Shown one piece after another: positions 9,711 to 44,039 of a stretch of 64,000 nucleotides of DNA (position 1 is the first letter of the stretch; each line of letters begins with the position of its first letter). This DNA is from Dimorphilus gyrociliatus. Taxonomy: Eukaryota; Animalia; Annelida. A model generated the notes under the pieces. That model was given only the letters and a program-made list of their open reading frames with translations. It had not been told where the DNA came from and did not search any database. A program made the position numbers and the translations under genes. The stretch is taken from NCBI GenBank assembly GCA_904063045.1, contig CAJFCJ010000002.1, positions 496,001 through 560,000 on the forward strand, read 5' to 3'.

Positions 9711-12700
9711 ATGAAATACTTAGGTTGTTTGATTGTATTTTTACTGGCTTTCTGTGATGTCAAAGGTAAGGATAAGATCCTCTCTTTATAATTAAAAACA
9801 ACGAAACTAGATAAAATTACGACCAAACGACAAATATTAAAAACTTGCTAGAATTATAACTTTTAATAAATTAAAAAGTTAAAACATTTCCAAAAAGCAT
9901 ATTCTTAAGAAAAAGGATTGTCTTCGAGAGGAAAAAACGCTATAAATATACCGCACTTTCCTATTTGGAGTGATGCTCTTACAGTGCAAATCGAAAGCGC
10001 TGCCCTAATAAAAACCCAATGAATTGAACGGAAGCTATTCTTGTTCGGAAAGTTCTTTTTTCAAAATATTGACAGCTCTAACGCCATTAGCTCTTGATTG
10101 GAAATCAGTTATTTAAACGTAATAATACGCTTGATAATTCTCTTTAACTTTTCTCTTTTTCCTTTTATTTAAGTTAAAATTACCTGATCAGTAAATGTAG
10201 AATGAAGCATAAAGTAATTGAATGAAAAGAGCATATGTTACTTATATATGAATAGATTTAGCGGGTATCCATAGTCAAAAGAAAATAATCTCTATTTTCT
10301 TAAGATTTATTTATATTAATTTGATATAGATGTTAGAATAAGCAAAGTTAAAAACCTAATTAACTGAGTTTTATTCATGACATTTTTAATTTAATTTTGC
10401 ACCAAAAGTGAACCAAACGATTATTGAAAAATCGATTGTTTAAGATTATTCACAAATCACTCTGTTAAAAACCCTTTTTTGAACGAAAATTAATATGAGA
10501 AACAATCGGATTTAGACTATTAAACTAATTAATAATGATTTGTTATACGCAAATTGTTTGAGTAATAAGATGTAGTTTTTTAGTTGTTGTTTGAGCTTTT
10601 CGGGAAACATTAAAATCGATGTTAATTAGAATCAATATTTGGATTTGTTTATAGTGATGCTGGAAGATAGAAATATAGATTTCTAATTGATGTTTATTTG
10701 TTGCCATATAAACCAACCAATTACTTTATGTTGTATGTTACTGTTTTCATGGCAATATACTCACAGTACATATCACTTAATTGCATAAAAGTTTTATAAA
10801 ATCAATACGTAACAATTCTAAAAATTTTCTATTTATATTCAGAATAACCGTTGATAATTTCTTTATCATTAGATTTATCTATTCCTGCATATATATCCAG
10901 CATACAGTATATACAATACTAAAACTTAGTCTATTTTATACATTAAAAAGGCTATACTGTAGAAAAAGTACTATTGATAGCATAATTATTTTATAAAAAT
11001 CTTCTTAGGAACATTATCCTTCACTTCTCCCTCGGCTAACTCGGAGGTTCACTTGACTGAAAACAATAATGGTGACGCCGCATCACCTGTTACCATTTCT
11101 TTCAACCTGGAATCGAATGGAGGCGTAACACCTTATACTTATTCAATAGTAAGTGGGGGTGACAGCAAGTTTGAAATCGATACTTCTCCAGATCCTGATA
11201 TTTTTCGTCAAAAGTCTGGCGCTTTATTTGATTATGAAACAACTTCATCGTACACAATTGAGTTGAAAGTTATTGATAGCACTGGCGGTACCAGCCTTAC
11301 TGCTTCTGTAACTTTCACCGTTATAGTGGATGATTGGAACGACGAAACCCCTCAACTCGGTTCAGCTTCTTATACAGCATCAGTTGATGAATCTCAAGAT
11401 CCTGGTGCTGCTGTAACTCTCTCGCCAACTATATCGTCATCAGATGGCGATGCAATTGACAATGGAAATCTAAGATATAGCTTGACAGGGGCTGACTCTA
11501 CGTATTTTCAAATAAATGCGGTAAATGGAATCTTAAAAACATCATCAATTCTAGATGCTGATCCCTCTGGAAAAACTTACACAAATGTAAAAATCGTAGT
11601 AACTGATTTGGCGGGAAAGACCTCAACTGCTGCAGTCACAGTTACTGTTAATGACTTGAATGATGTCGTTCCCACATGCGATCCTTCAGTGTACTATGCG
11701 TCCATTAACGAAAACACTGCAGGTAAGAAACTTGATTGTACTAAATAATTAAAATATATTTGAAAATAAAAACAGTCAGCACATCACTATTGCAATTCTC
11801 TTGCACGGATACTGACAATACCGCCTCCTTTAAAGCTTTAACATTTTCAATAACTTCTGGGGATGATACGGGATCAGAAAAATTTCAAATAGCAAATACA
11901 AACGAATTACATACAACAACTACATCTTGCGACTATGAGGACTTAACTCAACAAAAATATACATTGGCTGTCACAGTTAAGGATGCAACAACAAACTTTA
12001 ATAGTGTCAATATAACAGCAATAATAAATGTACATATGAAAAAAAAACTGTCATACAAAACTAAAAAATACTAATTTCAGATAAATCCTATTAACGACAA
12101 CACACCCACGTGGTCATCTACGCCCACTGGTGGGTCATTTTATGAGAATCAAACAATCGGCGAGATACTCACTACATTGCAGGCTACTGACACAGACAAG
12201 GGAGCGAATGGAGACAATACCTTATCATATCACATAATTTCAGCAACTACACAAACGTCCGCTGATTCCTCGGCACTATTCAAAATAGATCCAATCACAG
12301 GAAATATTCTGACAGTCGCATCCCTAGATAAGGATACTGGCATAACAGAACACAGACTGGTAGTGAAGGCACAGGATGACGGAACTTCTCCTGGTATAAA
12401 GAGTGTGACGGCTTCCATAACATATACAATACTTGACTACAACGAATTTCAACCAACGTTTGACAAAACAATCTACACTGTCAGTATAAATGAAAATACC
12501 AACGTAGGTACAACAATCCAAACATTAACTGCAACTGACCAAGACGACACAAGTGCCTTTACCTTTAGGTAAGCAAACAATCATTAAATAAAAACAGCAA
12601 ATCATCACAAAATTCATCCGTTTATCAATATTCATGTTAGTAATAATGAAATCTTTATTTATTTAAAAAGTTTTGGAACCGGTAATGAATTGGATCATTT

Positions 12701-15700
12701 TGAAATAACAACTTCCTCTAACAATGGCCATGTGAAAATAAAAAGTACTATTGATCCTGATGGTGGAAGTCCACCTTCTTTCTATACATTGCAGGTAGGG
12801 GGACAGAAGATGATATTTTCTATTTGCTAAAATCTCATACATACAAAATGTACATTTTTATTTATAAAGGTTAAAGTGACTGATGGGTCATCTACACCAG
12901 CAGCACTCACTTCTACAGCCACCATTCAGATTTCAATATTGGATATAAATGATAATAATCCATCATTCTCTCCAGCTCCAGCACCATACAATGTATTAAA
13001 AATCCTATTACAATTATTGCTTTGCAAATTTTCTAATCAAATATTCTAAATAGTTGCCAGAAAATACTCCAGCAGGAACAACAATAATAACCCTTGTGGC
13101 CACTGATGATGACTTTAATAGTGAACTAACATTTTCAGAAGGAAGTATGTCATTTCTTATTTTATTGTAATTTGATTTGAAAATAAGAAATTTGTATTTA
13201 TTCTTTTCAGCTGGTGATACAAATGATAACTTTGCCATTCAAAGTGATGGAAAGATTGTTCTCCTCAAACAAATTGACTATGATACAATGGGAGTTAGCA
13301 AAATAATTAACCTCCAAGCAATTGTTAGTGATGGCTCAAATACAGCAACTGCTACTGCTCAGATTACAGTTACTGATGTGTCTGATTTAACACCAAGCTG
13401 CAACCCAGCTGCTGTATCCGCAAACATCAGTGAGACAGCATCTGTCAATGATGCAGTTGTTCAATTGTCCTGCTCTGATGATGGCAGTTTAACATATTCT
13501 ATTGCTAGTGGAAATACAAACACAGCATTCAAGTTTGTAAGTAATGAAATTCAAGTAAATGATATTGGAGCTGGTTCTACAGGTAATTTTCAATTATATT
13601 CTCAAATATAAAAACAAGGCTAATCAATGGGAAAATTTTCAGCCTTAGACTATGATGCTGGAGTGAAAGTGTACAATTTGATTGTTGATGTTTCTGATGG
13701 AACTAATACAATCAATGTACCAGTAACAATATCAATAAATCCAGTTGATGAAGGAGCACCAACTTTCACTAATACAGCAGTGAATGTCAATGAAAATGAG
13801 GTGGTTGGCTTTAGTGTTGCAACTTTTGCAGCATCTGATGTTGATGCAAGTCCACACAATGTTCAAAAGTACTCAATTACCTCAGGTTTTTGTTCAATTT
13901 TTTTTATCTCATATATATTACTGATGTATATAAATAGTAATAAGTAACTGATATATCTATCATGACTTTATTTTATTTAAAATTCTATTCCAACAGGAAA
14001 TAGCGAAGGAAAGTTTGTTATAAATCCATCTACTGGAGAAGTGTCTTTAAAAGACACTTTAGATTATGAGACAACCACCACATATGCTTTGACTATACAA
14101 GCAGATGATGGCACTGCAACTGGAAGTGGTATCTTGACAGTCAATGTTCAAGATATAAATGATAACACTCCTAGCTGTCCAAAATCTTTATACATTCCTA
14201 CTGCAGTAAATGAAAATGAAGCAAGTGACACTTTGGTTTTGAATTTAACAGAATGTAGTGATCCTGATACTTCATCAAATTTTGGATCAATTACTATGTC
14301 TATAACTGGAGATAATGGTCGATTTGCTGTATCCAACATGTTAATTAAAACTACTTCAACACCACTTGATTATGAAAGTGCAACAACTTATACTTTGATT
14401 ATAACATTGACCGATAATGGAGGTGTCAGTCCATCAAATACTGGAACTGTTACAGCTATAGTCAATGTAATTAGAAATAATGCAATATGTTCTTTTGGAA
14501 ATGTATTTATTTTTTTCTAAATTTCTTTTAAGGTTGCCCAATGAATGATAATACTCCTGCATGGAGCTCAACCCTACTGGATCAACTATTTCAGAGAGTA
14601 CAACAATTGGAACAACATTGTTAACATTGGCTGCCACTGATGCTGATCAGGGGTCCATTGGTGATAGCTCAATTACATATTCAATTGTCAGTGCTGAGGA
14701 TCAAGGTAAGATTAGTCATCTATGAGTTTTTTTTTTTAATTTCATCTATTTAAATTTAACAGCTGCAGTATCAACAATGAATCTATTCAAAGTTGGGCCA
14801 TCATCTGGACATCTACAACTTGTAGCCTCATTGGATAGAGATGCAGGGGTAACAGAACACCGGCTTGTTGTAAAAGCAGCAGATTCTGGTGCATCAGTCC
14901 TGAGTGTGACTGCATCCTTGACACTTACAATATCAGATTATAATGAATTCACACCAACATTTGATCATTTATTATACAATACAAAGTTGCAGAAAGTGCA
15001 GCTGTTGGAACAACTGTTTTGTCATTAACTGCTTCAGATTTGGATGCAACTTCTACTTTTGCTTTCAGGTGAGAATATTTTGTTTATCATTTGTAAGAGT
15101 TTAAGGAATATATATTTCACAACTATTTATTGTCTTAATGACAAAAGCCAGCTTTTTCCTTTTAAAAAAATGCTTATTAATCATTTTTTGTAAATATTTC
15201 TCTATATTGCAGCTATTCAAATAGTTGTAAACTTTTTTTATACCCTAAATAATAAGATTTTCTCTCTATTTATATTGTAAATATTTGCATGTCTTTAAAG
15301 ATTTTCTTTTCACTTCATCAATTAATGATGAAATGACAACAATTGTTTTTTACATCCAAAAATAGAAAGAATATTTCACTGTTTTAAAGATTTTCAAGCA
15401 AAAACTTCTAATTTATCAAAGCTTATCTTACCCATAATAAGATAGTACAACCAAACCCAATTATACTGAACCAATAGCTGTTGTATAAGAGAACAAACAT
15501 TCATAGTTGTTCACCTAAAGTGGGTGAAGTTTAGTGAAAAAGGAAGAATTGAGTTTCAGAAAGGATTCATTAAAATACGACAGGTTTACCCTAAACAGAC
15601 TTAATTGAATTTTATACTAAAATTCAACTGATTTCCAATCAAAATGCACATTTTAATTTATTATTTCTTGACTAAACATCAAAAAAAAGCAACAGCAATA

Positions 15701-18700
15701 GGTTATACCAAGGCAAATAAATGTGAACAAAAATATATGTCCAGTTAAATTTTTCTACAAATATTTATTTGCCTTATTTTAATAGTTTTGGAACTGGTAA
15801 TGAATTGGATCATTTTGAAATAACAACTTCCTCTAACAATGGCCATGTGAAAATAAAAAGTACTATTGATCCTGATGGTGGAAGTCCACCTTCTTTCTAT
15901 ACATTGCAGGTAGGGGGACAGAAGATGATATTTTCTATTTGCTAAAATCTCATACATACAAAATGTACATTTTTATTTATAAAGGTTAAAGTGACTGATG
16001 GGTCATCTACACCAGCAGCACTCACTTCTACAGCCACCATTCAGATTTCAATATTGGATATAAATGATAATAATCCATCATTCTCTCCAGCTCCAGCACC
16101 ATACAATGTATTAAAAATCCTATTACAATTATTGCTTTGCAAATTTTCTAATCAAATATTCTAAATAGTTGCCAGAAAATACTCCAGCAGGAACAACAAT
16201 AATAACCCTTGTGGCCACTGATGATGACTTTAATAGTGAACTAACATTTTCAGAAGGAAGTATGTCATTTCTTATTTTATTGTAATTTGATTTGAAAATA
16301 AGAAATTTGTATTTATTCTTTTCAGCTGGTGATACAAATGATAACTTTGCCATTCAAAGTGATGGAAAGATTGTTCTCCTCAAACAAATTGACTATGATA
16401 CAATGGGAGTTAGCAAAATAATTAACCTCCAAGCAATTGTTAGTGATGGCTCAAATACAGCAACTGCTACTGCTCAGATTACAGTTACTGATGTGTCTGA
16501 TTTAACACCAAGCTGCAACCCAGCTGCTGTATCCGCAAACATCAGTGAGACAGCATCTGTCAATGATGCAGTTGTTCAATTGTCCTGCTCTGATGATGGC
16601 AGTTTAACATATTCTATTGCTAGTGGAAATACAAACACAGCATTCAAGTTTGTAAGTAATGAAATTCAAGTAAATGATATTGGAGCTGGTTCTACAGGTA
16701 ATTTTCAATTATATTCTCAAATATAAAAACAAGGCTAATCAATGGGAAAAATTTTCAGCCTTAGACTATGATGCTGGAGTGAAAGTGTACAATTTGATTG
16801 TTGATGTTTCTGATGGAACTAATACAATCAATGTACCAGTAACAATATCAATAAATCCAGTTGATGAAGGAGCACCAACTTTCACTAATACAGCAGTGAA
16901 TGTCAATGAAAATGAGGTGGTTGGCTTTAGTGTTGCAACTTTTGCAGCATCTGATGTTGATGCAAGTCCACACAATGTTCAAAAGGTACTCAATTACCTC
17001 AGGTTTTTGTTCAATTTTTTTTATCTCATATATATTACTGATGTATATAAATAGTAATAAGTAACTGATATATCTATCATGACTTTATTTTATTTAAAAT
17101 TCTATTCCAACAGGAAATAGCGAAGGAAAGTTTGTTATAAATCCATCTACTGGAGAAGTGTCTTTAAAAGACACTTTAGATTATGAGACAACCACCACAT
17201 ATGCTTTGACTATACAAGCAGATGATGGCACTTGCAACTGGAAGTGGTATCTTGACAGTCAATGTTCAAGATATAAATGATAACACTCCTAGCTGTCCAA
17301 AATCTTTATACATTCCTACTGCAGTAAATGAAAATGAAGCAAGTGACACTTTGGTTTTGAATTTAACAGAATGTAGTGATCCTGATACTTCATCAAATTT
17401 TGGATCAATTACTATGTCTATAACTGGAGATAATGGTCGATTTGCTGTATCCAACATGTTAATTAAAACTACTTCACACCACTTGATTATGAAAGTGCAA
17501 CAACTTATACTTTGATTATAACATTGACCGATAATGGAGGTGTCAGTCCATCAAATACTGGAACTGTTACAGCTATAGTCAATGTAATTAGAAATAATGC
17601 AATATGTTCTTTTGGAAATGTATTTATTTTTTTCTAAATTTCTTTTAAGGTTGCCCCAATGAATGATAATACTCCTGCATGGAGCTCAACCCCTACTGGA
17701 TCAACTATTTCAGAGAGTACAACAATTGGAACAACATTGTTAACATTGGCTGCCACTGATGCTGATCAGGGGTCCATTGGTGATAGCTCAATTACATATT
17801 CAATTGTCAGTGCTGAGGATCAAGGTAAGATTAGTCATCTATGAGTTTTTTTTTTTAATTTCATCTATTTAAATTTAACAGCTGCAGTATCAACAATGAA
17901 TCTATTCAAAGTTGGGCCATCATCTGGACATCTACAACTTGTAGCCTCATTGGATAGAGATGCAGGGGTAACAGAACACCGGCTTGTTGTAAAAGCAGCA
18001 GATTCTGGTGCATCAGTCCTGAGTGTGACTGCATCCTTGACACTTACAATATCAGATTATAATGAATTCACACCAACATTTGATCATTTATTATACAATA
18101 CAACAGTTGCAGAAAGTGCAGCTGTTGGAACAACTGTTTTGTCATTAACTGCTTCAGATTTGGATGCAACTTCTACTTTTGCTTTCAGGTGAGAATATTT
18201 TGTTTATCATTTGTAAGAGTTTAAGGAATATATATTTCACAACTATTTATTGTCTTAATGACAAAAGCCAGCTTTTTCCTTTTAAAAAAATGCTTATTAA
18301 TCATTTTTTGTAAATATTTCTCTATATTGCAGCTATTCAAATAGTTGTAAACTTTTTTTATACCCTAAATAATAAGATTTTCTCTCTATTTATATTGTAA
18401 ATATTTGCATGTCTTTAAAGATTTTCTTTTCACTTCATCAATTAATGATGAAATGACAACAATTGTTTTTTACATCCAAAAATAGAAAGAATATTTCACT
18501 GTTTTAAAGATTTTCAAGCAAAAACTTCTAATTTATCAAAGCTTATCTTACCCATAATAAGATAGTACAACCAAACCCAATTATACTGAACCAATAGCTG
18601 TTGTATAAGAGAACAAACATTCATAGTTGTTCACCTAAAGTGGGTGAAGTTTAGTGAAAAAGGAAGAATTGAGTTTCAGAAAGGATTCATTAAAATACGA

Positions 18701-33700: not shown

Positions 33701-36700
33701 GATAGTAAGAAAAACTATCTCAATACTAAGCACGTGATTTCAGATAACTATTTTTTTCAGGCTCCCTTAACAATGCAATTGAGTTCTTTAGAATAGATCC
33801 AATCGGAGGAAAAATTACTACAACGAAGTTGTTTGATTATGAATCAATAAAATCTTACTCTATATATGTTCAAGCATCTGATGGGAATGTATCACCAATA
33901 ACATCTGTATTACAAGTCGATGTTGCTATAACTGATGTAAATGATAATTCTCCCATTTTCAATCAAAGCACTTACAGCTTTTCAGTCTTGGAAAATGAAA
34001 TAACTAATGCTACAATTCATAAATTTATTGTGACTGATAAAGATTCAGTATCTACGAGCTTTAGTTATGAATTGCAAGCAACAGGGGTAGCAGCAGCTAA
34101 ATTCAGTCTAAAGAATGGTAATACTGATGAGTTGTTACTAAAAGAGCCTATTGAACCTGATGGAAATGCACCAGAGCCTACACAATATCAATTAATTATT
34201 AAATGCAAAGATAATGGAAGCCCTGAAATGACAGCAACAGCAACGATTCATATCACCGTCACTTCTGTAAATGACTACAGTCCTGCCTTTGTTGCTGGTG
34301 TGAGCACTACTATACCTCTACAAGAATCCCAACCTGTTGGAACAAGTTTTCAAACTCTCACAGCCAATGATGATGACTTTGGCCCTGCTGGAGATATAAC
34401 TTACAGTAAAGTAGATGGTACAGATCCTGATGGGTATTTTGTAGTGGACTCAGGCACTGGAAAACTTTTCCTAGCAAGGAAATTAGACTATGAAAACCCT
34501 TTAAATCGTAGTTTGTCTTTTAAAGTACAAGCAATAGACTCGGATTTATCAAGTCCTAGGACAGGTACAATCGAAGTAACTGTTAATGTTGGTGACGATG
34601 ACGATAACCCTCCTGTGTGTCAAGAAAAGTCTGTTACTGTGTCATTTAATGAGACTACTCCAGTTAACACGCTTATTGTTTCGCCCAACCTAAATTGCGA
34701 AGATCCAGATTCAATGGACAACAACCTTATCTACTTGGTAATGGGAAATTTTAATGATGATATAATTGTTGAAAATAATACCGCAGGCGTCATAAAATTT
34801 GCAAATTCTCCAGACTACGAGATTCATAAACAATATAATTTGGAAGTTATTGCAATAAGCAAGGGCAAATCCACAACTGTCTTTGTAACGATAATAATCA
34901 ATCCAATCAATGATAATGATCCGATATTTGCATCGAATATGACTATCAGTAAATCTGAAGATATTCCAGTTGGTGAAATAATTTCAACATATCAAGCCTC
35001 AGACTTGGATTTAGGTGCTGATGGTATAATTACTTACGAAATAAGCAGTGTTACAAATTCTGGCATTATGCACTTCCTGATAAATAGTATCACAGGAGAG
35101 ATAAAACTAAAGAAACAACTGGACTTTGAGCAAAATAAAGATTTTACTATATCTGTTATAGCCACAGATGGCGGAACACCTCCCAGAAAAACTTACGGTT
35201 TCATTAACCTGACGGTAACAGATATAAATGATAATGCTCCAAACTGTTTAATCAAAACAGCAGTCATAGTCCAAGAAGAGGCGACTTCTTTAGGAAATTT
35301 ACCCTTACAACTTATTCCAGATCTTGGCTGTACTGATGCAGATTCTGGTGTAAATGGGGCTTTAAGCTACACCGTCGTTGAAAATTCAGGTGCTAATATT
35401 TTTTCGATAAATCCAGGCTTTTCTGGGAGAGGAGAATTGAATTTGACAAATAGCATGGATTATGAAACGAAGCGTGACTACACTTTGAAAATTACTGTCC
35501 AAGACGGAAGATTAAAATCTGTAGAAATTCCAGTTATCATATCAGTTAAGGCTGTCAATGAAGCCGGCCCTGTGTTATTAAATCAAATAGTCACAGTGAA
35601 AGAGACTGATCCAATCAATACAGATGTAACAGATATGATTGGAACTGATATTGACAGCAATGACCACCCACATGGTACACTAATCTATAGTATTGTTGAC
35701 GGAGACCCAAGTAATAGATTCTTCATTGACCCTCTTAGTGGGAGAGTCAAAATAGCTGGTCCATTAGATAAAGAAATGCAATCAGTATATCATTTAATTA
35801 TAAATGTAATAGAAGTTGCAGAAACAAATTCCATCAATGCAACTCTTACTGTTAACATTGCAAATGAGAACGATAATATACCAAACTGTACTGTCAAATC
35901 TTTCATTGTATCTGTTCCTGAAAATACAATGGTCTCTCCTGTTAATCCTTATGAATTAATCAACCTTGGTTGCTCCGATAGAGACAAAAACAATTTGACT
36001 TATGCTTTAACATTTGGTGATGGCTCCTATTTTGAGGTAAATTCGTCTGGAATAGTCAAGTTGAAGTCTGTTGTTGATTTCGATGGCCCAAGTAACCTTC
36101 GAGAATTCAATCTCGTTATTAGTGTATCAGACACTAATTACACTATCACAATAAGAGGAAAAGTTGTTATTGTCCCTGAGAATGAAGGAACACCAAACTT
36201 CACAGCCAACGTTTTCCTTATAAGTGTTAATGAATCTGCTGGCATAGGTTCAACATTATTAAGAACAGAAGCTACCGATATCGATTCTCCTGACACAAGT
36301 CACGGCAGAATAACTTATTCATTTAGCAATGGGTCACATGAACCATTTATCATTCAACCAGAAACAGCAGATATAATTTTGGCATCAGGTATGTATAATT
36401 TGAAGTATGTTCCCTAAGATTTATAAAGTTTTACATATAGGGCTCGATAGAGAAACTAAAGACTCCTATGAATTTGAGATCAAAGCGTCAGATGGTCAAC
36501 TAAGTTCTTCTGTTTCTGTTACGATCCAAGTGACAGATGTAAATGACAATACACCCAAATTTAATCCCCTAACTTACTTCAAAGCAGTTAGAGAGAACGA
36601 AACAGTTGGTAGCAGCGTGATCACTGTGCATGCTACTGATTTGGATGATCCTTTAACGAATTCTCATGGAAACATATCTTACTCGATCGAATCAGGAAAT

Positions 36701-39700
36701 GTTGGATCAGCTTTTAGCATTAATCCGGTATCTGGCAGAATTGACATCTCAGCATCTCTGGACTATGAAAGTATAAAATCTTATGAGATAGTTACTATAG
36801 CTGTAGATTCTGAAGGATCGGCGGTATCCAAAACAGGAACAACCTTAGTAGTCATAAATATTGAACCATCGAATGATAATATTCCAGTTTTTCAACTAAC
36901 TCCATATTCAACGTCCATACAAGAGAATCTGCCTGTGGGATCGTCAGTATTTCAAGTTAGCGCTACGGATGCCGATGATGACATTGATGGCAGATTGTTT
37001 TTCACAATGAATAATCATCCTAAATTTCATCTAGACTCTGAAACAGGAATCATATCTGTCAAAGCTTTGTCTGATTATGAAATTTTAGACGAGCGATTGT
37101 TCACCTTCACAATTATAGCAACTGATATGGGACAGCCTCCTAATAGTGTTGCTCAAAATCTCACAATAATGATTACAGACGTAAATGATGTAAGTCCTGT
37201 CTGCACGCCTAAGTTATACACTAAAACCTTAAGGGAAGACGCTCCAACTTCAACAATTGTTCTTGCTCCATCTTGCTCAGACGAAGATTCTGGAAGTAAT
37301 GCAGAATTGGAGTATGCAATTTTAACACCTCCAGGCTCATCTGGAGATTTCAACATAAATGCGACAACAGGCGAAGTATCGTTAGGTACAAGCTTAGATG
37401 CTGAAGTTACTCAAAACCACTTGATTTTCATCAGAGTATCAGATCGAGGTACCCCTTCTTTGAGTACAACTGCCAGTATAATGGTTACAGTCACTGATGT
37501 AAATGAACACTTTCCGGACTTTGGTAACTCAACAACAAACATTACTATTAATGAAGATTTATCTGTAGGGTCAACTTTTGCCCAGATAACGGCTACAGAT
37601 GAAGATGTTGAGAAAAAGATATCCTATAGCTTGCATCCCTCATCTGAAACATTTGATATTGATACAAGAACTGGCCAAATTAAACTTTTAAAACAATTAA
37701 ATAGAGAATCGATCAACTTTTACCTATTAACAGTTAGAGCGGTCGACTTTGGTATAATAGACGAAGTTAAATATCTTGACCATAATTTATCAGTAAACAT
37801 TGGAGATATAAATGAGAGGCCAACTTTCTCTCCCACAACATATGTCGTATCATTAGCCGAAAATTTTACAATTGGCAATACTGTTATTGTTGTTTCTGCT
37901 TCCGATGATGACCTTAATGCAGAAGGAACCATAGATTATTCAATATTTTCCGGCAATGCAGAAAATAAATTTTCCATCAGCAAAAACAATGATGGAAATG
38001 GTCAACTTGTTTTATCAGCTGAATTAGATTTTGAAGTTACAAAAGAATATACGTTGACCATTTATGCTGCCGATAACGGAATACCATCTTTAACGTCATC
38101 TGCTATCGTAAATATTAGAGTTACAGGAATAAATGAGGCATCACCAATTTTCAGTCAAAATTTTACAGAATCTATCAGTGAACTAGCTGCAATTGGTCAA
38201 GTCATTCAGACAGAAATTGCAACAGACAGTGATCATGGAATAGATGGTCAAATCATATATTCCCTGCTGGGTAGTGACTCATCGATTGTAACTATTGATG
38301 CAATTACTGCCACAATAAAATTAGTGACTTCTTTAGATAGGGAAGTTAAAGACTCATATACTATGGTTATTCAAGCAATGGATCTAGGGGTTCCTTCTAA
38401 AACTGGAAGCGCTACTTTGGTTTTAACTGTAACAGATAGAAACGATAAAAAACCTGTTTGCTCCCCTGCTTCAATAGTAACTTCATTCCCTGAAGATAAA
38501 ACAGGATCTTTGGTCACATTAAATTGTACGGATCTTGATTCAGCCATTTCTAATTTCAATGTTATTTCATATTCACTATCTGGTAGTGACGCATCTCATT
38601 TCCAGGTTGATTCCAGTACAGGAGAAATAAGTCTTGGAAATGGATTAAACTTCGACTATGAAACAAAAAAATCTTTCAAATTTTCATCCACTGCAATGGA
38701 CGGCGGTGGTAGTCTCTTAAATGTTCCTGTATCCATTCAAATTACTGGAGTAAACGAGCATAGTCCTGCTTTTTCATCGTCTACATTTAATTTAAATATA
38801 TCCGAGAGCACTACTGTTTCTACTTCTGTAGCATCCTACACAGCTGTTGATGATGATCATGGAATAGATGGCGAATTGCGTTATAAGATTTTTTCTGGAA
38901 ATGAGGACAACCACTTCATTTACGACTCAATCAGTGGCGATTTGATAGTAGCTACCGATTTAGATAGAGATATTTTACCCAATAGTTTCTCATTAACATT
39001 GTTCGCTATTGACGCAGGATCTCCGAATAGAACAGGATCAGCAACGCTGCTTATTACCTTGATCGATACAAACGACAACTTCCCAACTTGTAATATCACG
39101 CTATATGGTGGAGTAGTTACAGAAGGAGTTACTTCAAACGGATTCACAATTGTGACTTTATCGCAATTCTGTAGAGACATTGATGAAGGCGTTAATTCTC
39201 AAATAGCTTATACAATAACAAACGGTAACGAAGCAGGTATATTTGAAGTGGATAGCAACACAGGGGAAGTAAGGGTGGCTGACAATACAGCCATTAATGC
39301 AGAAGCGGCTCTAAAACATTACCTAACCGTAAAAGTCGCTGACCAGGGAACACCTGCCAATTATATAGAAGTTTTCATTAGTATCAAAGTTCTTGACACC
39401 AATGAAGCTGCTCCTGTATTCTCTAATGCTCCATATACATCTACTCTAAGAGAAAACTCTGACTTATATGAAAAAGTCTATTTGGCTTCAGCTACAGATA
39501 CTGACAAGGGCATAAACGGAAAGTTTTTCTTCTCAATAGTTGGAGGCAACACCGAGGGAGCATTTCGTATTAACTCGGATACAGGCTTAGTGTACTTAAA
39601 TGGAACACTAGATAGGGAAAGATACGATACTTATAACTTAATTTTAAGAGTAACGGACAAAGGTCCTAATGAACTAAGCAGCGAAACGACTCTTACAGTG

Positions 39701-42700
39701 AAAGTTACCGACTATAATGACAATAACCCAAATTGTTCAACAACGAACTATTTACATGTAATGAACGAAAGCTCTGTAGTTGGAACAAGTATTTTAACAT
39801 TAGATTGTTCTGATATTGATAATGGAAGTAATGCAGACCTACGTTACTCGATATATAGCGGCGATTTAAAGAATCAATTTGAAATTGATGCCGTTACTGG
39901 AGAGCTTACAACAACAGCTGTTTTAGACTACGAAACTGATCAATTTTACAGTTTAGTTATTAAAATAACTGATCAAGCTGTCAATGGACCACCAAGAACA
40001 GGAACATCTACCGTCATAATAAATATTTTACCTGTTAATGAGCATAATCCTGTGATAACAGGAGCTTATGACTTTTCTATTTCTGAGGATGTGGATATTG
40101 GCTATGTTCTAACCACTGTAACAGCCACTGATCAAGATAGTATTACAAATTTACATGGAGTACTTCGTTTTTATATAACAGCTGGGAATGATGAAAATCA
40201 CTTTGTAATAGACGAATTTTCAGGGAAAATAAAGACAGTTTCAAAACTTGACAGAGAAGATGTTCAAAGTTACAATCTCAAAGTGGAAGTTGAGGATAGC
40301 GCTAAGAGTGCTGGAGATGTTAGAACTGCTGCAATGAATATAACAATTACAATTACTGATGTAAATGATAATTATCCAAAGGTAACACCAGCTGCTTATT
40401 CAACGTCTGTATCAGAGTCTAGTTCGATTGGCCAGACGATAATTTCTATAGTTGGTACTGATGATGATATTGGATCCAATGCCCAATTAACGTATTCGTT
40501 TATATCTGGAAACTCAGATTCAGCTTTTGCTCTGACAAATCAACATTTGACAATAGCCAAAAAGTTGGATTATGAAACAAAGAAACATTATGTTTTGCAC
40601 ATAGCAGTATCTGACAGTGGAACACCATCACTTACAACTCAGGCTCTTGTGACAGTTAGCGTCTTATCATTCAACGAATATAGCCCTGTTCTATTTCAAA
40701 CAAGCAATAGTATTCAAATATCAGAAGATATTGCAGTAGGTTCATTGATTTACACAGCCAGGGCATCAGATTCAGATAACGGACAAGCTGGAAATGTGAG
40801 ATTTTCAATAACAAATGGCAATCCTTCGAATTCCCACTTTTTAATTAATCCGATAACGGGAAGTGTAATAGTGGGTACAAAACTTGACTATGATGGGATT
40901 TACAAATCCTATACTTTAGAAATTACAGCAATGGATATGCAGGGACTTTCAATTAATGCCAAATCTCACAAAATGAACTTAACCATCACTCTCACTGATG
41001 TAAATGATAATTGGCCTCTCTTTACCAAAAATACCTACATTAAGCATGTGAAAGAGAATGTCGTGAGTAGTCAATTGATTACAACTGTAACTGCAAATGA
41101 CCCGGATAGTAGTAATTTCGGAGATACGCGTAAGTTTGATTTTGAAATCATATTCTTCCATTACAACTAACTAATTGATCTTTTCGATACAGAATATTAT
41201 TTGATTGGAGGGGATGGAAATGGAAATTTCTTGGTTGAGGCATCTAATGGAGAAGTCAGAGGTGGCGTTACACCTGACATCGACTATGAAAAGAAAAAGG
41301 AATATAACTTAATTATAAAGGCAGTCGATGGAGGAAATCCACCAAAGTCATCCACTTGTCTTGTCAGAATTCTAGTAGATGATGAGAATGATAATGCAGG
41401 AATTTTCCATCCCTCTAATGTTAGAGTAGCTATTGCCGAAAATCAACCAGCCGGAACAATTATAACGAACGTCTTTGTAACGGATGATGATACGGGCTTA
41501 AACGGTCAAACAACAATTTCACTGGATTTCTCTAGTAACCCTAACAATTTCTTTGCTCTAAGGACAACTGGATCAGGAAATGCTGAGATTACAACAGCTA
41601 AAGTTTTAGATAGAGAAAATCATGGTCAACAGCAAGAAATTCGGCTGCATGCTGTTGATGCGGGAACTCCACAGCGAACTGCAACTACTACTGTTTATAT
41701 CGAGATATTGGACGAAAATGATAACGGTCCTATCTTTGATGCAGTACCAAATGATTTACGAGTTTGGGAAAATGCTACAGTTGGCCAAAATATATTAACG
41801 GTGCATGCGACAGATGCTGATATAAATGAAAATGCTAAATTAAGATATTTCATCATTGATGGAGATTACCTTGGAAATTTCTTCATTGATTCAATATCAG
41901 GCCAGATTAGAGTACTTCGAACGCTAAATCGAGAATTATTCTGGAATTATAAACTAACAGTTAAAGCAATAGACAGTGGTGTGCCCCAAAAATCAGCTGA
42001 AACTATAGTTTCAATAATTATTCTCGATGTTAATGACGTAATTCCACAATTTCCAGACGGCTATACTTTCTCTTTAACTGAAAATGCTGCCGTTGGCAGA
42101 CCTGTTGGAACTATTAAAGCAACTGATAAAGATATAGGAGGTAATAGTCTATTGATCTATAGCATTAATAGAGCGCAAGTGGGAAGTGCAAATCATTTCA
42201 AAATTGACTCAAATACTGGTACAATATCAGTTAACATTGCTAGCATAGATCGAGAAACAATTGCCACATATGTCCTATGGTGTAGAGCATCTGATTCGGG
42301 ATCTCCCCCTCTGTATGCTGAAACGAGAGTGACAATTAACGTAAATGATTTGAACGACAACGCTCCGAAATTTACCAAACCCTTGTTTACTGGCACCGTA
42401 ACAGAAACCTCACCATCAGGTCAACAGGTTGCATTAATTCAAGCTGTTGATTTGGATGCCAATGCTAATGGAATAGTTTTCTATTCTTTTAAGAACGCAT
42501 CAATAGGACAATATTTTAGGCTTGATACAAATACCGGTAACTTAACAACCCTTCAAGTCTTTGATAGAGAGAAAACGCCAGAATTCAAATTCCAAATCAG
42601 AGGCTACGATAAGGGCAACCCACAATTAGACTCTTTTGTTCCTGTTCATATAACTATAGCTGATATCAATGATAATCGACCCTTCTTTCCAAGGAGTATG

Positions 42701-44039
42701 ATCAGAAAGCATGAAATGGCTCATGACGAGCCTATTGGAGCAATTTTATTTCAATTTACGGCTATTGATTATGACACTGGAAAAAATGCTGAACTCACCT
42801 ATTCAATATTGGACAGCAACGATATTTTCGAAGTAGATGGAAAAAGTGGTAATGTAAGTTATAAAGCCACAGCTCAAGAAGGAGCAACATATAATTTTGA
42901 CGCAACTGTATCTGATGGTGGAATACCAAAACTCTCAGACACAACAACAGTCACCGTCGTGACTTTTTCAAAAGTAAAAGTTTGTGTAGCTATCAAGTTA
43001 GGCATATCCGAATCAGAATTTAGCACAAAGCAGAATGACTTCACATCAAAATTACAAAATGAGCTTCAAAAGTCTATTCCTGATGCAAAAGTTAAAATGT
43101 GCGGTGATCCTAGTCCGACAGGATCTCCAACTTCTCGACGTCTATTACAAGCATCAACAGTTACCATATATATCTATGCCACAAAAGGAAATGATTCTGT
43201 GTCATCTGACTCATTCATTCAAAAAGATGATTTGCTTAAAGTACTGAACTCTAATAACAATGGCAATGGAGGAATTTTAAACGGACCAGAATTTAACCAA
43301 TATAGTGTTTCTCAAGTTACATCTTATCCAACTGTAACACAAACAAGTAGCACGCCATGGATTGAGACTACAACTGGAATAGCTATTGTTTCATTTGTTG
43401 TAATAGTTTTGCTGTTCCTCATAGTAGTGATTATTTTTCTTACAATTTATGTAATGAAAAATAAATCTAGAAGAGCTGTTTCGCCAATTCTTCCTACGGC
43501 CCATACCGACGCTGAACCTCCTGGATATCAGCCGCCTTCAAAAGTTGTTGTAGCCCAACATAACCAGGTAGAATATATTAGTCTAAGTATTAAAAAATGT
43601 AATGTAACACAATAATCTTACAGCCATCAGATGACAACTGGGGTGCAAGTGTTGAAGAGCCTCAGCCCACTACATCTAGTATAAACACTGGTTTGTATTT
43701 ATTCGAGTTTATTAAAATATATTTAATTTAATTCACATATTGGTGATAAAAGTATTTAAAGTCAAATTCACTATGCTAAAATTAGGATGATTGTTTCACA
43801 GGTTCGAAATCACCTCCTCCATCAACTAATTAATATCACAATTATTATCAAATATCACTTGTAAGTGGCGATATCAAAAATAGGTTATTGTTATTAATAA
43901 TTTTTCTCTTTTAGATTCACGAATTCAATCGGCAAGAGTGGCCTTACGTCCAATGACAGCGAAATCTTTGAGACGTAACCCATCTTCGAAAGTTAAATCA
44001 TCAGAGGATGAACAATCACTGACAGCTGTCGACATATAA
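9711..44039 (+). CDS. Giant non-classical cadherin, about 80 EC repeats, single TM, short cytoplasmic tail (roughly 8,500-9,000 aa)
   Basis: Signal-peptide exon 9711-9765 (MKYLGCLIVFLLAFCDVKG) splices in phase to 11009. Dozens of exons carry PE, LDYE/LDRE, AxDxG and DxNDNxP motifs, and about 80 inter-domain linkers were counted by hand. Large 3' exons lie at 33761-36388, 36441-41129 and 41193-43567. A TM helix (IAIVSFVVIVLLFLIVVIIFLTIYVM) lies near 43380-43455. Tail exons are 43624-43690 and 43915-44039. No EGF or LamG domains were seen. Single-base indels interrupt copies 1 and 2 of the internal repeat as assembled. Confidence 0.92.
12669..22314 (+). repeat. Intragenic tandem repeat, about 3.1 copies of a 3118-bp unit (8 exons, 635 codons, 6 cadherin domains)
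   Basis: The exon starting TTTTGGAAC(C/T)GGTAATGAATTGG recurs at 12671, 15786, 18906 and 22024 (periods 3115, 3120, 3118). Identical ORFs recur in the track (13177/16292/19412). Identity includes introns and ends at 22314. Confidence 0.98.

What the first reader, a model, noticed from the sequence alone, without database searches (positions are those of the whole stretch)
9711..44039. Giant cadherin of about 80 EC repeats with no EGF/LamG region: candidate ultra-long adhesion or tether filament
Counting linker motifs through the spliced gene gives about 80 EC domains, then one membrane-adjacent domain, one TM helix and a tail of about 100 aa (seen). This far exceeds Fat (34 EC), Dachsous (27) and CDH23 (27). 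The architecture (ECs, membrane-adjacent domain, TM, short tail, no EGF/LamG) is of the CDH23/PCDH15/Cad99C type that links stereocilia, cilia or microvilli (established). At about 4.5 nm per EC the extended ectodomain would be about 350 nm, enough to bridge cilia, microvilli or cuticle layers (inference). Automated pipelines would probably fragment it or label it Fat4-like.
Basis: partly seen in the sequence, partly recalled or inferred. Interest (0 to 1): 0.85.

Follow-up and report, generated by a model that had tools for sequence, protein, structure and literature searches.

The report
Giant 80-repeat cadherin gene
The tiny marine worm Dimorphilus gyrociliatus has one expressed gene for a membrane-anchored adhesion protein with 80 cadherin repeats in a row (about 0.36 µm if straight), built like the hair-cell tip-link cadherins; nobody has studied it, and 18 of its repeats come from a very recent triplication.

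Summary
My spliced model runs from 9711 to 44039 on the + strand. It has 62 exons and 26.5 kb of coding sequence, and gives 8,836 aa: signal peptide, 80 gap-free EC repeats, one membrane-adjacent domain (MAD), one TM helix and a 101-aa tail. There is no EGF or LamG.

RNA contigs confirm every 5' junction tested. A related species has the same gene as an intact 6,924-aa, 62-EC ORF with the same exon sizes, so this is one conserved gene.

The MAD model matches PCDH15 MAD12 (Z 13.2) and CDH23 MAD28 (Z 11.7), so the CDH23/PCDH15-type chassis is supported. The tether function is still inference.

Caveats:
- The window is Dimorphilus gyrociliatus, and its public annotation already has one 7,694-aa gene here.
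- Public databases hold predicted cadherins of 52-67 EC, and earlier notes from this scan report 85-EC cadherins on other contigs of this genome. The size is extreme, not unique.
- 18 ECs lie in three identical 3.1-kb cassettes. The assembly carries six coding indels there. Short-read contigs contradict the three that were tested.
- DNA k-mer depth is 7× the flank, so 80 is the assembled count, not a settled one.

Verdict: a new, extreme member of a known kind.

The parts
9711..9765 (+). Exon 1: start codon and 19-aa signal peptide (phase-1 donor GTAAGG)
   Evidence: Sequence read. RNA contigs X2 and X4 carry this exon's sequence as the overhang joined at 11007. The ortholog has a 55-nt exon 1 with a signal peptide.
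9766..11008 (+). Intron 1 (1,243 nt, the longest)
   Evidence: One low-depth metatranscriptome piece lies at 10658-10794 and is unexplained.
11009..12568 (+). Exons 2-4 (714, 254 and 488 nt): EC1 to the start of EC5
   Evidence: Junctions 11722|11776, 12029|12081 and 12568|12671 appear as GT..AG joints in RNA contigs. The ortholog's matching exons are 714 (after correcting the acceptor), 254 and 488 nt.
12659..22311 (+). Tandem array of 3.1 copies of a 3.12-kb unit (12659-15773, 15774-18893, 18894-22011, plus a partial fourth copy). Each full unit has 8 exons, 1,905 nt of coding sequence and 6 ECs, giving EC6-23.
   Evidence: Found. The copies differ only by 7 single-base indels and no substitutions. 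Exon junctions are confirmed by RNA contigs, with the exon-5 acceptor at 13643. CpG o/e is 0.08 here against 0.66-0.91 elsewhere.
14536..14984 (+). Three single-base deletions in copy 1 (after 14536, 14571 and 14984) that break the frame as assembled
   Evidence: The missing C is present in every short-read contig that covers each site: DNA at all three, X2/X4 RNA at 14571 and 14984, X6 RNA at 14984. These are assembly errors.
16985..17476 (+). Copy 2 indels: extra G at 16985, extra T at 17232, missing A at 17476 (plus an extra A at 16747 in an intron). Net +1 as assembled.
   Evidence: Most are one-base changes in the length of a short run of the same base. They were not tested directly, but the collapsed short-read contig equals the copy-3 sequence.
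22024..24316 (+). Older diverged cassette (8 exons of 124, 123, 94, 369, 243, 470, 175 and 313 nt; about EC24-29), the ortholog of the single cassette in the sister species
   Evidence: 52% identity to the ortholog's cassette, against 49% for the triplicated one.
24370..33704 (+). 21 exons encoding about EC29-52
   Evidence: Gene model. EC continuity shown. Exon sizes match the ortholog one to one, except 710 vs 704 and 100 vs 109 nt.
33761..43567 (+). Three giant exons (33761-36388, 36441-41129, 41193-43567): EC52-80, MAD, TM and the start of the tail
   Evidence: Pfam finds 28 cadherin stretches. The ortholog's exons are 2,628, 4,683 and 2,375 nt. The in-frame TAA at 41168 lies in the 63-nt intron.
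42959..43366 (+). Membrane-adjacent domain (MAD81, aa 8571-8706), ferredoxin-like β-α-β-β-α-β fold, with a conserved RRLLQ motif
   Evidence: AF2 model has pLDDT 73.8. VIA-align gives Z 13.2 to PCDH15 MAD12 and 11.7 to CDH23 MAD28. Foldseek gives E 2.5e-6. Sequence homologs exist in amphioxus and molluscs.
43376..43453 (+). Single transmembrane helix (aa 8710-8735)
   Evidence: Hydropathy scan.
43454..44039 (+). Cytoplasmic tail of 101 aa over three exons (to 43567, 43624-43690, 43915-44039). It has a PPGY motif and ends in the conserved C-terminal -TAVDI.
   Evidence: The ortholog's tail ends -TSVDV and has LPSY at the same place.
43802..43833 (+). Alternative last exon used by the public annotation (its product ends here)
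   Evidence: One search gives the gene end, which maps to window 43833. No conserved counterpart was seen in the ortholog.

Best explanation
Shown: window 9711-44039 (+) is one expressed, conserved gene of the annelid Dimorphilus gyrociliatus. It encodes a type-I membrane protein of about 8,800 aa (about 940 kDa before glycosylation, pI about 4.1). The layout is signal peptide, 80 tandem EC repeats as assembled, one ferredoxin-like membrane-adjacent domain, one TM helix and a 101-aa tail. The gene grew by repeated duplication of 2-EC and 6-EC units. The newest step is a tandem amplification of an 8-exon, 6-EC cassette specific to this lineage, and its copies are still identical. Inferred (my odds about 45%): almost every EC-EC junction keeps the core Ca2+ ligands, so in sea water the ectodomain is a stiff rod of about 360 nm. 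The MAD, by analogy with PCDH15, may pair two chains next to the membrane. The N-terminal ECs bind a partner in trans. The tail would couple to a scaffold through its conserved PPxY/LPxY site and its hydrophobic C-terminal -T-[AS]-V-D-[IV], which looks like a PDZ ligand. Together these would make a long tensile tether between apical surface structures (cilia, microvilli, cuticle), as CDH23, PCDH15 and CDHR2 do at shorter range.
For: Gene and architecture: 80 abutting complete ECs in the spliced model, with Pfam agreeing for the large exons. There is a single signal peptide and a single TM helix. All eleven splice junctions in 11.0-15.9 kb, plus the exon 1-2 junction, appear in RNA contigs from two studies (X2, X4) and a coral-tank metatranscriptome (X6). 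The public annotation has one 7,694-aa gene here. Conservation: the ortholog lies on a 28-kb short-read contig of a related species. It has the same upstream PTP gene, 38 exons of near-identical sizes, an uninterrupted 6,924-aa ORF with 62 ECs, MAD, TM and tail, and 55.5% identity over 6,903 columns. MAD: fold matches to PCDH15 MAD12, CDH23 MAD28 and CELSR1 stand well above SEA domains. MADs are described for exactly these cadherins (10.1101/460097). Rod: the XEX Glu is kept in 75/80 ECs, DXD in 79 and 73 of 80, DXE in 72 and 79 of 80, and XDX in 75/80. No junction loses more than 4 of the 10 checked positions. The two-EC model (pLDDT 89) superposes on CDH23 EC22-24 at 1.9 Å. The figure of 4.5 nm per EC comes from PMC8691648. 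Tail motifs are conserved between the two species. Cassette history.
Against: There is no expression, localisation or binding data for the protein. RNA evidence covers only the 5' 6 kb, so one 26-kb transcript is inferred from ORF continuity, conservation and the annotation. The MAD shows no sequence similarity to PCDH15 or CDH23, and the fold also occurs in Fat and CELSR, so the tip-link analogy rests on domain order alone. Every second junction lacks the first Asp of DxNDN (P or G instead) and may bind fewer ions, so the rod may be less stiff than assumed. As assembled the ORF is broken by six coding indels. The three in copy 2 were not checked directly. The EC number is uncertain: 3 cassettes are assembled, against 7× k-mer depth. 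The PDZ and WW motifs are short and unverified.
Confidence: 0.6

Rival explanations
1. The assembled count of 80 ECs is wrong because the identical-cassette array is mis-assembled. The locus may really hold about 7 cassettes (about 104 ECs, about 11,400 aa). Alternatively the extra copies lie in another gene, and this locus may hold a number other than 3.
For: The short-read DNA contig for the cassette has k-mer depth 1650, against 235 for the 19-kb unique flank (7.0×). The 281-nt piece that the assembly holds 4 times has depth 1854 (7.9×), so the difference equals one copy. This internal consistency supports the depth reading. RNA contig depth is 70.5 against 6.7 in X2. Unpolished indels occur only inside the array, as expected for a poorly resolved repeat in a PacBio assembly. 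An earlier scan note reports another contig of this genome with five or more near-identical six-EC cassettes.
Against: The tool warns that contig depth is not a copy number. I could not read the other contig, so I cannot say whether its cassettes are the same sequence. The long-read assembly does place three full copies here between unique flanks.
Confidence: 0.45
2. The locus is a decaying pseudogene. The frameshifts in cassette copies 1 and 2 are real and the long ORF is not translated in full.
For: As assembled, copy 1 has three 1-nt deletions and copy 2 a net +1.
Against: Every short-read DNA and RNA contig covering each of the three copy-1 sites carries the missing base. The indels are mostly one-base changes in short runs of the same base, inside a repeat of a PacBio assembly. 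The other 24 kb of coding sequence has no defect. The ortholog is an intact 6,924-aa ORF, and the gene is transcribed and correctly spliced.
Confidence: 0.04
3. It is a Fat/Dachsous-like signalling cadherin for planar polarity or growth control, acting at cell-cell contacts by folding back on itself, and not an extended tether.
For: Automatic names of its relatives are 'protocadherin Fat 4-like'. MAD folds also occur in Fat and CELSR (CELSR1 Z 8.9). The tail has a PPxY-type motif, as used in Hippo-pathway interactions (my inference). Variant junctions could allow bending.
Against: There are no EGF or LamG modules between the ECs and the membrane. The tail is only 101 aa and has no Pfam-recognised domain in the part scanned. 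The MAD is directly membrane-adjacent, as in CDH23, PCDH15 and CDHR2. No junction lacks most of its Ca2+ ligands.
Confidence: 0.15
4. It is mainly a surface-coat or matrix component: an acidic, heavily glycosylated brush, or a shed ectodomain that builds the glycocalyx, cuticle or egg envelope. On this reading it is not a specific trans-binding link.
For: It has 98 N-glycosylation sequons, 22% Ser+Thr and pI about 4.1. Its length changes quickly between species (62 vs 80 ECs) by cassette gain, which is easier to tolerate in a spacer than in a precisely matched link. The MAD carries an RRLLQ dibasic site conserved from amphioxus to molluscs, which could be a cleavage site (my inference).
Against: The TM helix, tail motifs and MAD are conserved, which argues for a regulated membrane anchor. 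All known MAD-TM cadherins form specific links.
Confidence: 0.15

Closest known systems
Cadherin-23 (CDH23, tip-link upper part; 27 EC + MAD28 + TM + PDZ-binding tail)
   Same: Same order of parts: signal peptide, uninterrupted ECs, MAD directly before one TM helix, and a short tail with a hydrophobic C-terminus. The MAD model aligns to mouse CDH23 MAD28 (8tri) with Z 11.7. The EC-pair model fits CDH23 EC22-24 at 1.9 Å.
   Different: It has 80 ECs rather than 27. There is no detectable sequence similarity in the MAD. The tail is unrelated apart from a possible PDZ-ligand end. The CDH23-specific EC1 features were not examined. Orthology is not shown.
Protocadherin-15 / Drosophila Cad99C (11 EC + MAD12 + TM)
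   Same: It is the best structural match of the juxtamembrane domain: 6eet, 6c10 and 6bxz at Z 12.2-13.2, rmsd 3.2-3.4 Å over 110-114 residues. It is a MAD-TM cadherin that forms links between actin protrusions.
   Different: This protein has seven times more ECs. MAD sequence identity is only 17-20% in the structural alignment and is not found by profile search. MAD-mediated cis dimerisation is not tested here.
CDHR2 / protocadherin-24 (9 EC + MAD10 + TM; intermicrovillar links)
   Same: Same EC-MAD-TM-tail layout (PMC8691648; 10.1101/460097).
   Different: Very different length.
Amphioxus and mollusc 'protocadherin Fat 4-like' / 'cadherin-23-like' proteins (XP_019645840, XP_035676136, XP_078678319, KAL3853664, WAR26922; 3,486-4,552 aa, 26-39 EC)
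   Same: These are the only proteins whose MAD is recognisably homologous by sequence (24-27% identity, BLASTP E 2e-8, conserved RRLLQ-x-VT-V-Y). In the four that carry a TM helix (the Mya arenaria entry is partial, without one) the MAD sits directly before it. They are probably the same bilaterian family.
   Different: They are half the size or less. Their tails differ. None is characterised.
Fat / Fat4 (34 EC + MAD + EGF/LamG + TM + long tail)
   Same: A giant cadherin with a MAD-like module after the last EC. Database pipelines give this name to the relatives.
   Different: The defining EGF/LamG region and the long signalling tail are absent.
Other predicted giant cadherins: Nematostella LOC116612238 (7,723 aa, 56 EC by my HMM), Sycon 'Fat 1-like' (6,691 aa, 57), Monosiga A9UQP1 (7,042 aa, 54, with a PTP domain), an unnamed ENA protein (7,250 aa, 67)
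   Same: Very long uninterrupted EC arrays ending in a TM helix.
   Different: Nematostella shows no MAD match to this protein, and none of the others did in the iterative search over all fetched proteins. All have fewer ECs. Monosiga has a cytoplasmic phosphatase. All are uncharacterised predictions.

Membership tests
Cadherin superfamily | Tandem extracellular cadherin (EC) repeats of about 110 aa (Pfam PF00028) | tested here: met
   Pfam E-values are 1e-97 to 1e-240 on the large exons, with 28 stretches. There are 80 complete ECs in the spliced model.
Cadherin superfamily | Ca2+-binding motifs at EC-EC junctions (XEX, DXD, DXE, DXNDN, XDX) | tested here: met
   Core acidic positions are kept in 72-79 of 80 ECs. 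26 of 79 junctions are fully canonical and 26 lack one position. The first Asp of DXNDN alternates with Pro or Gly.
MAD-TM cadherin-related proteins (CDH23 / PCDH15 / CDHR2 type) | Ferredoxin-like membrane-adjacent domain between the last EC and the TM helix | tested here: met
   The AF2 model (pLDDT 73.8) gives Z 13.2 to PCDH15 MAD12 and 11.7 to CDH23 MAD28, with Foldseek E 2.5e-6. The TM helix starts 4 residues after the modelled domain.
MAD-TM cadherin-related proteins (CDH23 / PCDH15 / CDHR2 type) | No EGF/LamG or other modules in the ectodomain; single TM helix; short tail | tested here: met
MAD-TM cadherin-related proteins (CDH23 / PCDH15 / CDHR2 type) | C-terminal PDZ-binding motif that recruits a harmonin-type scaffold | tested here: inconclusive
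   The tail ends -TAVDI (ortholog -TSVDV), a conserved ending with hydrophobic residues at the last and third-from-last positions. Binding was not tested.
CDH23 or PCDH15 orthologue | Sequence-level orthology of the MAD, tail or tip (EC1-2 handshake features) | tested here: not met
   Neither the MAD sequence nor a 7-sequence MAD profile finds any PDB cadherin MAD at E ≤ 10. EC1-2 hits CELSR1, protocadherins and CDH23 alike. The specific tip features were not examined.
Fat / Fat-like cadherins | EGF and laminin-G modules between the ECs and the TM helix; long conserved cytoplasmic domain | tested here: not met
   Residues 28-8572 are all EC, followed by the MAD and the TM helix. No EGF or LamG hit was found. 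The tail is 101 aa.
Classical cadherins | Catenin-binding cytoplasmic domain (Cadherin_C) | tested here: not met
   No such Pfam hit in the MAD-TM-tail segment scanned. The last 63 aa were not scanned, but they are too short to hold the domain.

The most novel reading that the evidence does not exclude
The cadherin's length is set by the copy number of an identical, in-frame 6-EC exon cassette (27 nm per copy). That number may be larger and more variable than the assembly shows: about 7 copies by k-mer depth would give about 104 ECs, about 11,400 aa and about 470 nm, the longest cadherin on record. On this reading, unequal crossing-over (and possibly whole-cassette skipping, which keeps the frame) tunes tether length between haplotypes, individuals or species (62 ECs in the sister species). 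The array also carries a repeat-confined CpG-to-TpG/CpA decay, which points to a methylation or RIP-like process acting on tandem repeats in an annelid germline.
Probability: 0.25. Interest if true: 0.75.

Novelty: new member of a known kind. Interest (0 to 1): 0.55.

Why it matters
All cadherins studied so far stop at 34 ECs (Fat). The mechanics of long cadherin links is known only from the 11- and 27-EC tip-link proteins. Here is a verified, expressed, conserved 62-80+ EC protein with the same MAD-TM anchor, in a small worm that can be kept in culture and has a 74-Mb genome. It offers a concrete case for asking what a link of about 0.3-0.5 µm is used for, and how such a molecule is made, folded and kept straight. 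It also shows repeat-protein growth caught in the act: identical exon-intron cassettes absent from the sister species. Practically, it flags that the public gene model (7,694 aa) is about 1,100 aa short, because of unpolished indels in the repeat.

Tried and rejected
1. My first gene-finder pass fused the upstream PTP gene (8301-9055) to the cadherin and bridged frames with 4-25-nt micro-exons. I rejected this after retraining and after finding the signal-peptide exon at 9711.
2. I rejected in-frame 'introns' inside the big exons (41000-41044 here; four in the ortholog) because they would delete EC linker or MAD residues.
3. I considered a reassigned stop codon, because of single in-frame TAAs between open frames. 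I rejected it: each TAA lies in a short GT..AG intron.
4. Tandem Repeats Finder found nothing because its longest period is 500. The array was found by the repeat finder.
5. Sequence searches of the MAD against the PDB, as a single sequence and as a profile, gave nothing. Only fold comparison worked.
6. PDB sequence searches with EC1-2 and EC78-80 did not discriminate between subfamilies.
7. Literature searches for described giant cadherins, spiralian cadherins, D. gyrociliatus cadherins and the SRA run of the ortholog gave nothing usable.
8. A look-up of earlier scan findings by cassette sequence came back blank, so I could not tell whether the cassettes on the other contig are the same.
9. 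The EC-pair model cannot test the proposed Cys-Cys clamp, because no coordinates are returned.
10. All sequencing runs offered were contigs, so true read depth, transcript ends and the 3' 28 kb of the mRNA could not be examined.


Full report
**What the window is.**
The neighbouring single-exon DEG/ENaC channel gene (50315-52180) is 100% identical to DgyrCDS1033 of Dimorphilus gyrociliatus. It lies on contig CAJFCJ010000002.1 of GCA_904063045.1. Locus L001 starts at window 40224, so the window corresponds to about 496,001-560,000 of that record. This miniature marine annelid has a 73.8-Mb PacBio-assembled genome with a median intron of 66 bp (10.1101/2020.05.07.078311). That fits the 30-36% GC and the 50-75-nt introns seen here. 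Neighbours of the cadherin are:
- an annexin (− strand);
- a tyrosine-phosphatase-domain gene just upstream (8301-9055, + strand);
- a Ras/Arf-like GTPase (− strand);
- the channel gene;
- a bicarbonate transporter.

**Checking the observation.**
Open frames with cadherin motifs fill the + strand from about 11.0 to 43.6 kb. Pfam finds 8, 14 and 6 PF00028 stretches in the three largest exons. I built an EC profile from the window's own repeats and a splice-aware dynamic-programming gene finder trained on the large exons and on the clear introns.

After curation the model has 62 exons from 9711 to 44039, 26,509 coding nt and 8,836 aa. Exon 1 (9711-9765) encodes a 19-aa signal peptide and splices over a 1,243-nt intron to 11009. 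In the spliced protein the profile finds exactly 80 EC domains. Almost every one is aligned over nearly its full length (profile start 1-19, end 105-109; EC80 ends at 94). They abut with gaps of −3 to +20 residues from aa 28 to 8572. This would not happen if the splice sites were wrong. After EC80 come a 136-aa domain, one TM helix (aa 8710-8735) and a 101-aa tail. No EGF, LamG or other module fits anywhere.

**Independent support for the gene model.**
All sequencing runs offered were assembled contigs. Two runs not labelled as RNA (X4 'DNA?', X2 unlabelled) are clearly transcriptomes, because their contigs skip GT..AG introns. They confirm every junction I predicted between 11009 and 15909, with one correction: the cassette's exon-5 acceptor is 13643, not 13649. 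Their overhang at 11007 is the exon-1 sequence, which confirms the first junction. A 2024 coral-tank metatranscriptome (X6) holds pieces at 99% or better identity with three of the same junctions.

The public annotation has one gene here with a 7,694-aa product ending at window 43833. That is a different last exon (43802-43833) from mine.

Comparative evidence is the strongest support. P0065, the only close relative in a search of 1.84 billion proteins, led to a 28,068-nt short-read contig (SRA run SRR23372229, species not identified). I fetched it in three overlapping loci and joined them. It carries the same upstream phosphatase gene. The cadherin there has:
- a 55-nt signal-peptide exon;
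- 38 exons whose sizes match ours almost one to one (for example 254, 488, 1095, 948, 2628, 2375 and 67 nt);
- an uninterrupted 6,924-aa ORF with 62 contiguous ECs, the MAD, a TM helix and a tail.

It aligns collinearly to our C-terminal 6,876 aa at 55.5% identity. Its last exon ends -EEQSFTSVDV against our -DEQSLTAVDI. The 44039 end is therefore the conserved one, and the annotated end is at best an alternative. A 20-26-kb ORF kept intact at 55% identity in two species is a functional gene.

**The repeat array and what it does to the count.**
Positions 12659-22311 hold 3.1 tandem copies of a 3.12-kb unit. Each full unit has 8 exons, 1,905 coding nt and exactly 6 ECs, and it is in frame. The three copies show no substitution at all. 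They differ only by seven single-base indels, mostly one-base changes in the length of a short run of the same base. Six of the seven are in exons.

As assembled, copy 1 loses 3 nt in three places and copy 2 gains a net 1 nt, so the ORF is formally broken. When short-read contigs were laid on copy 1, the missing C was restored in every contig covering each site. The DNA contig covers all three sites, X2 and X4 RNA cover two, and X6 RNA covers one. No contig showed the assembled version. These are polishing failures inside a repeat of a PacBio assembly.

The same experiment raises a second issue. The cassette's DNA contig has k-mer depth 1650, against 235 for the 19-kb unique flank. That is 7.0×, where the assembly predicts 3×. 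The 281-nt piece present four times in the assembly has depth 1854 (7.9×). The two figures differ by about one single-copy depth, so the numbers look quantitative.

Either the array is under-assembled (up to about 7 cassettes, about 104 ECs), or about four more copies lie elsewhere. I could not read it. The figure of 80 ECs is therefore the assembled value and probably a lower bound.

**History of the repeats.**
Identity between ECs peaks at lags 2, 6, 12 and 18 along the whole protein. The first residue of the junction motif alternates D and P/G. The gene was therefore built from 2-EC and 6-EC units.

The sister species has a single cassette where D. gyrociliatus has four. That cassette is closest to the older, diverged fourth cassette (22024-24316): 52% identity against 49%. 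The 18 ECs of the identical triplet are thus a gain in the D. gyrociliatus lineage, with the last amplification too recent to have left a single substitution.

**What the parts are.**
The juxtamembrane domain has no Pfam or PDB sequence match. It is 61% identical in the ortholog and 24-27% identical to the equivalent domain of amphioxus and mollusc proteins of 3,486-4,552 aa. Those proteins are named 'protocadherin Fat 4-like' or 'cadherin-23-like' by pipelines.

An AlphaFold model from that 7-sequence alignment (pLDDT 73.8, β-α-β-β-α-β) matches the following:

| Target | Z | Other measures |
|---|---|---|
| PCDH15 MAD12 | 13.2 | rmsd 3.2 Å over 110 residues; Foldseek E 2.5e-6 |
| CDH23 MAD28 | 11.7 | |
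| Nup54 ferredoxin-like domain | 11.7 | |
| CELSR1 | 8.9 | |
| SEA domains | about 7 | |

This is the membrane-adjacent domain described for PCDH15, CDH23, CDHR2, Fat and CELSR (10.1101/460097). Here it sits directly before the TM helix, as in the first three.

The core Ca2+ ligands are kept in 72-79 of 80 ECs. Of the 79 junctions, 26 are fully canonical, 26 lack one of ten checked positions, and none lacks more than four. A two-EC model (pLDDT 89.4) overlays straight CDH23, CELSR1 and protocadherin pairs (TM 0.83-0.87). At 4.5 nm per EC (PMC8691648), 80 ECs give about 360 nm.

The tail has no known domain. Two short motifs are shared with the ortholog: PPGY/LPSY, and the C-terminal T-[AS]-V-D-[IV].

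**How it most likely works.**
Shown: it is a very large, acidic, glycosylation-rich type-I membrane cadherin with a MAD anchor, expressed and conserved.

Inferred: it forms a Ca2+-stiffened filament of a third of a micrometre or more. The MAD may pair two chains at the membrane, the tip binds a partner, and the tail hooks to PDZ or WW scaffolds. That would make it a long-range version of the tip-link and intermicrovillar links. I give the gene and architecture about 0.9 and the tether function about 0.45.

The rivals are a Fat-like signalling role, a surface-coat or shed-matrix role, and a pseudogene. They are weighed in the Rival explanations section, and the pseudogene reading is essentially excluded.

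**Comparison and novelty.**
The protein belongs to the cadherin superfamily and, by architecture and MAD fold, to the MAD-TM cadherin-related group. Orthology to CDH23 or PCDH15 is not shown. It is not a Fat cadherin or a classical cadherin.

Its size is extreme but not isolated. Among the 150 best public hits, my profile counts:

| Protein | Length (aa) | ECs |
|---|---|---|
| unnamed ENA protein | 7,250 | 67 |
| Sycon 'Fat 1-like' | 6,691 | 57 |
| Nematostella LOC116612238 | 7,723 | 56 |
| Monosiga cadherin-phosphatase | 7,042 | 54 |

Earlier scan notes describe 85-EC cadherins elsewhere in this same genome. I found no paper on any of them, or on D. gyrociliatus cadherins. I therefore class it as a new, extreme member of a known kind. 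Its interest lies in its length, its verified gene model, and the amplification caught while the copies are still identical.

**Limits.**
RNA evidence covers only the 5' 6 kb. No raw reads were available. The other cassette-bearing contig could not be inspected. The ortholog's species is unknown.

Noticed in passing
window 12659-22311: CpG is almost absent from the tandem cassette array: 6-7 CpG per 3.1-kb unit, o/e 0.08, against 0.66-0.91 in the rest of the gene and the flanks. TpG and CpA are in excess (1.43 and 1.44, against about 1.2 and 1.15), and the boundaries coincide sharply with the repeat. This looks like methylation-driven or RIP-like decay confined to the repeated DNA.
   Followed up: partly
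window, 24 of the 80 ECs (e.g. 36890-37534): About every second or third junction of the D-type (DxNDNxP) is followed by Cys, giving PxC. A second Cys lies 24-26 residues later, just before the DXD Ca2+ motif (C-[TS]-D-x-D). Both are invariant in a 14-sequence alignment that includes the ortholog. This suggests a disulfide clamp next to the Ca2+ sites. The geometry could not be checked because no coordinates are returned.
   Followed up: partly
window 8301-9090 (+): A protein-tyrosine-phosphatase-domain gene (active-site HC-x5-R) ends about 650 nt upstream of the cadherin start. The same neighbour is conserved in the related species' contig (L006 431-936). This is a curious parallel to the Monosiga giant cadherin, which carries a PTP domain in its own tail.
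   Followed up: partly
window 43802-43833 vs 43915-44039: The public gene model ends in a short exon (…PPSTN*) that is not visibly conserved. The conserved last exon (…TAVDI*) lies 80 nt further on. These are possible alternative 3' ends with and without the PDZ-ligand-like terminus.
   Followed up: partly
window 10658-10794: A 151-nt contig from a coral-tank metatranscriptome lies inside intron 1 at low depth. It could be unspliced RNA, contaminating DNA or an unannotated exon.
   Followed up: no
window 50315-52180 (+): This is an intron-poor DEG/ENaC channel gene (DgyrCDS1033, 634 aa). Its nearest named relative is an FMRFamide-gated sodium channel-like protein of the annelid Malacoceros (49% identity).
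   Followed up: no
MAD, window about 43130-43150 and homologs: The dibasic motif (R)RRLLQ in a low-confidence loop of the MAD (pLDDT below 50 at residues 56-62) is conserved from annelid to molluscs and amphioxus. It could be a proprotein-convertase site, which would mean ectodomain shedding or a two-chain mature form.
   Followed up: no
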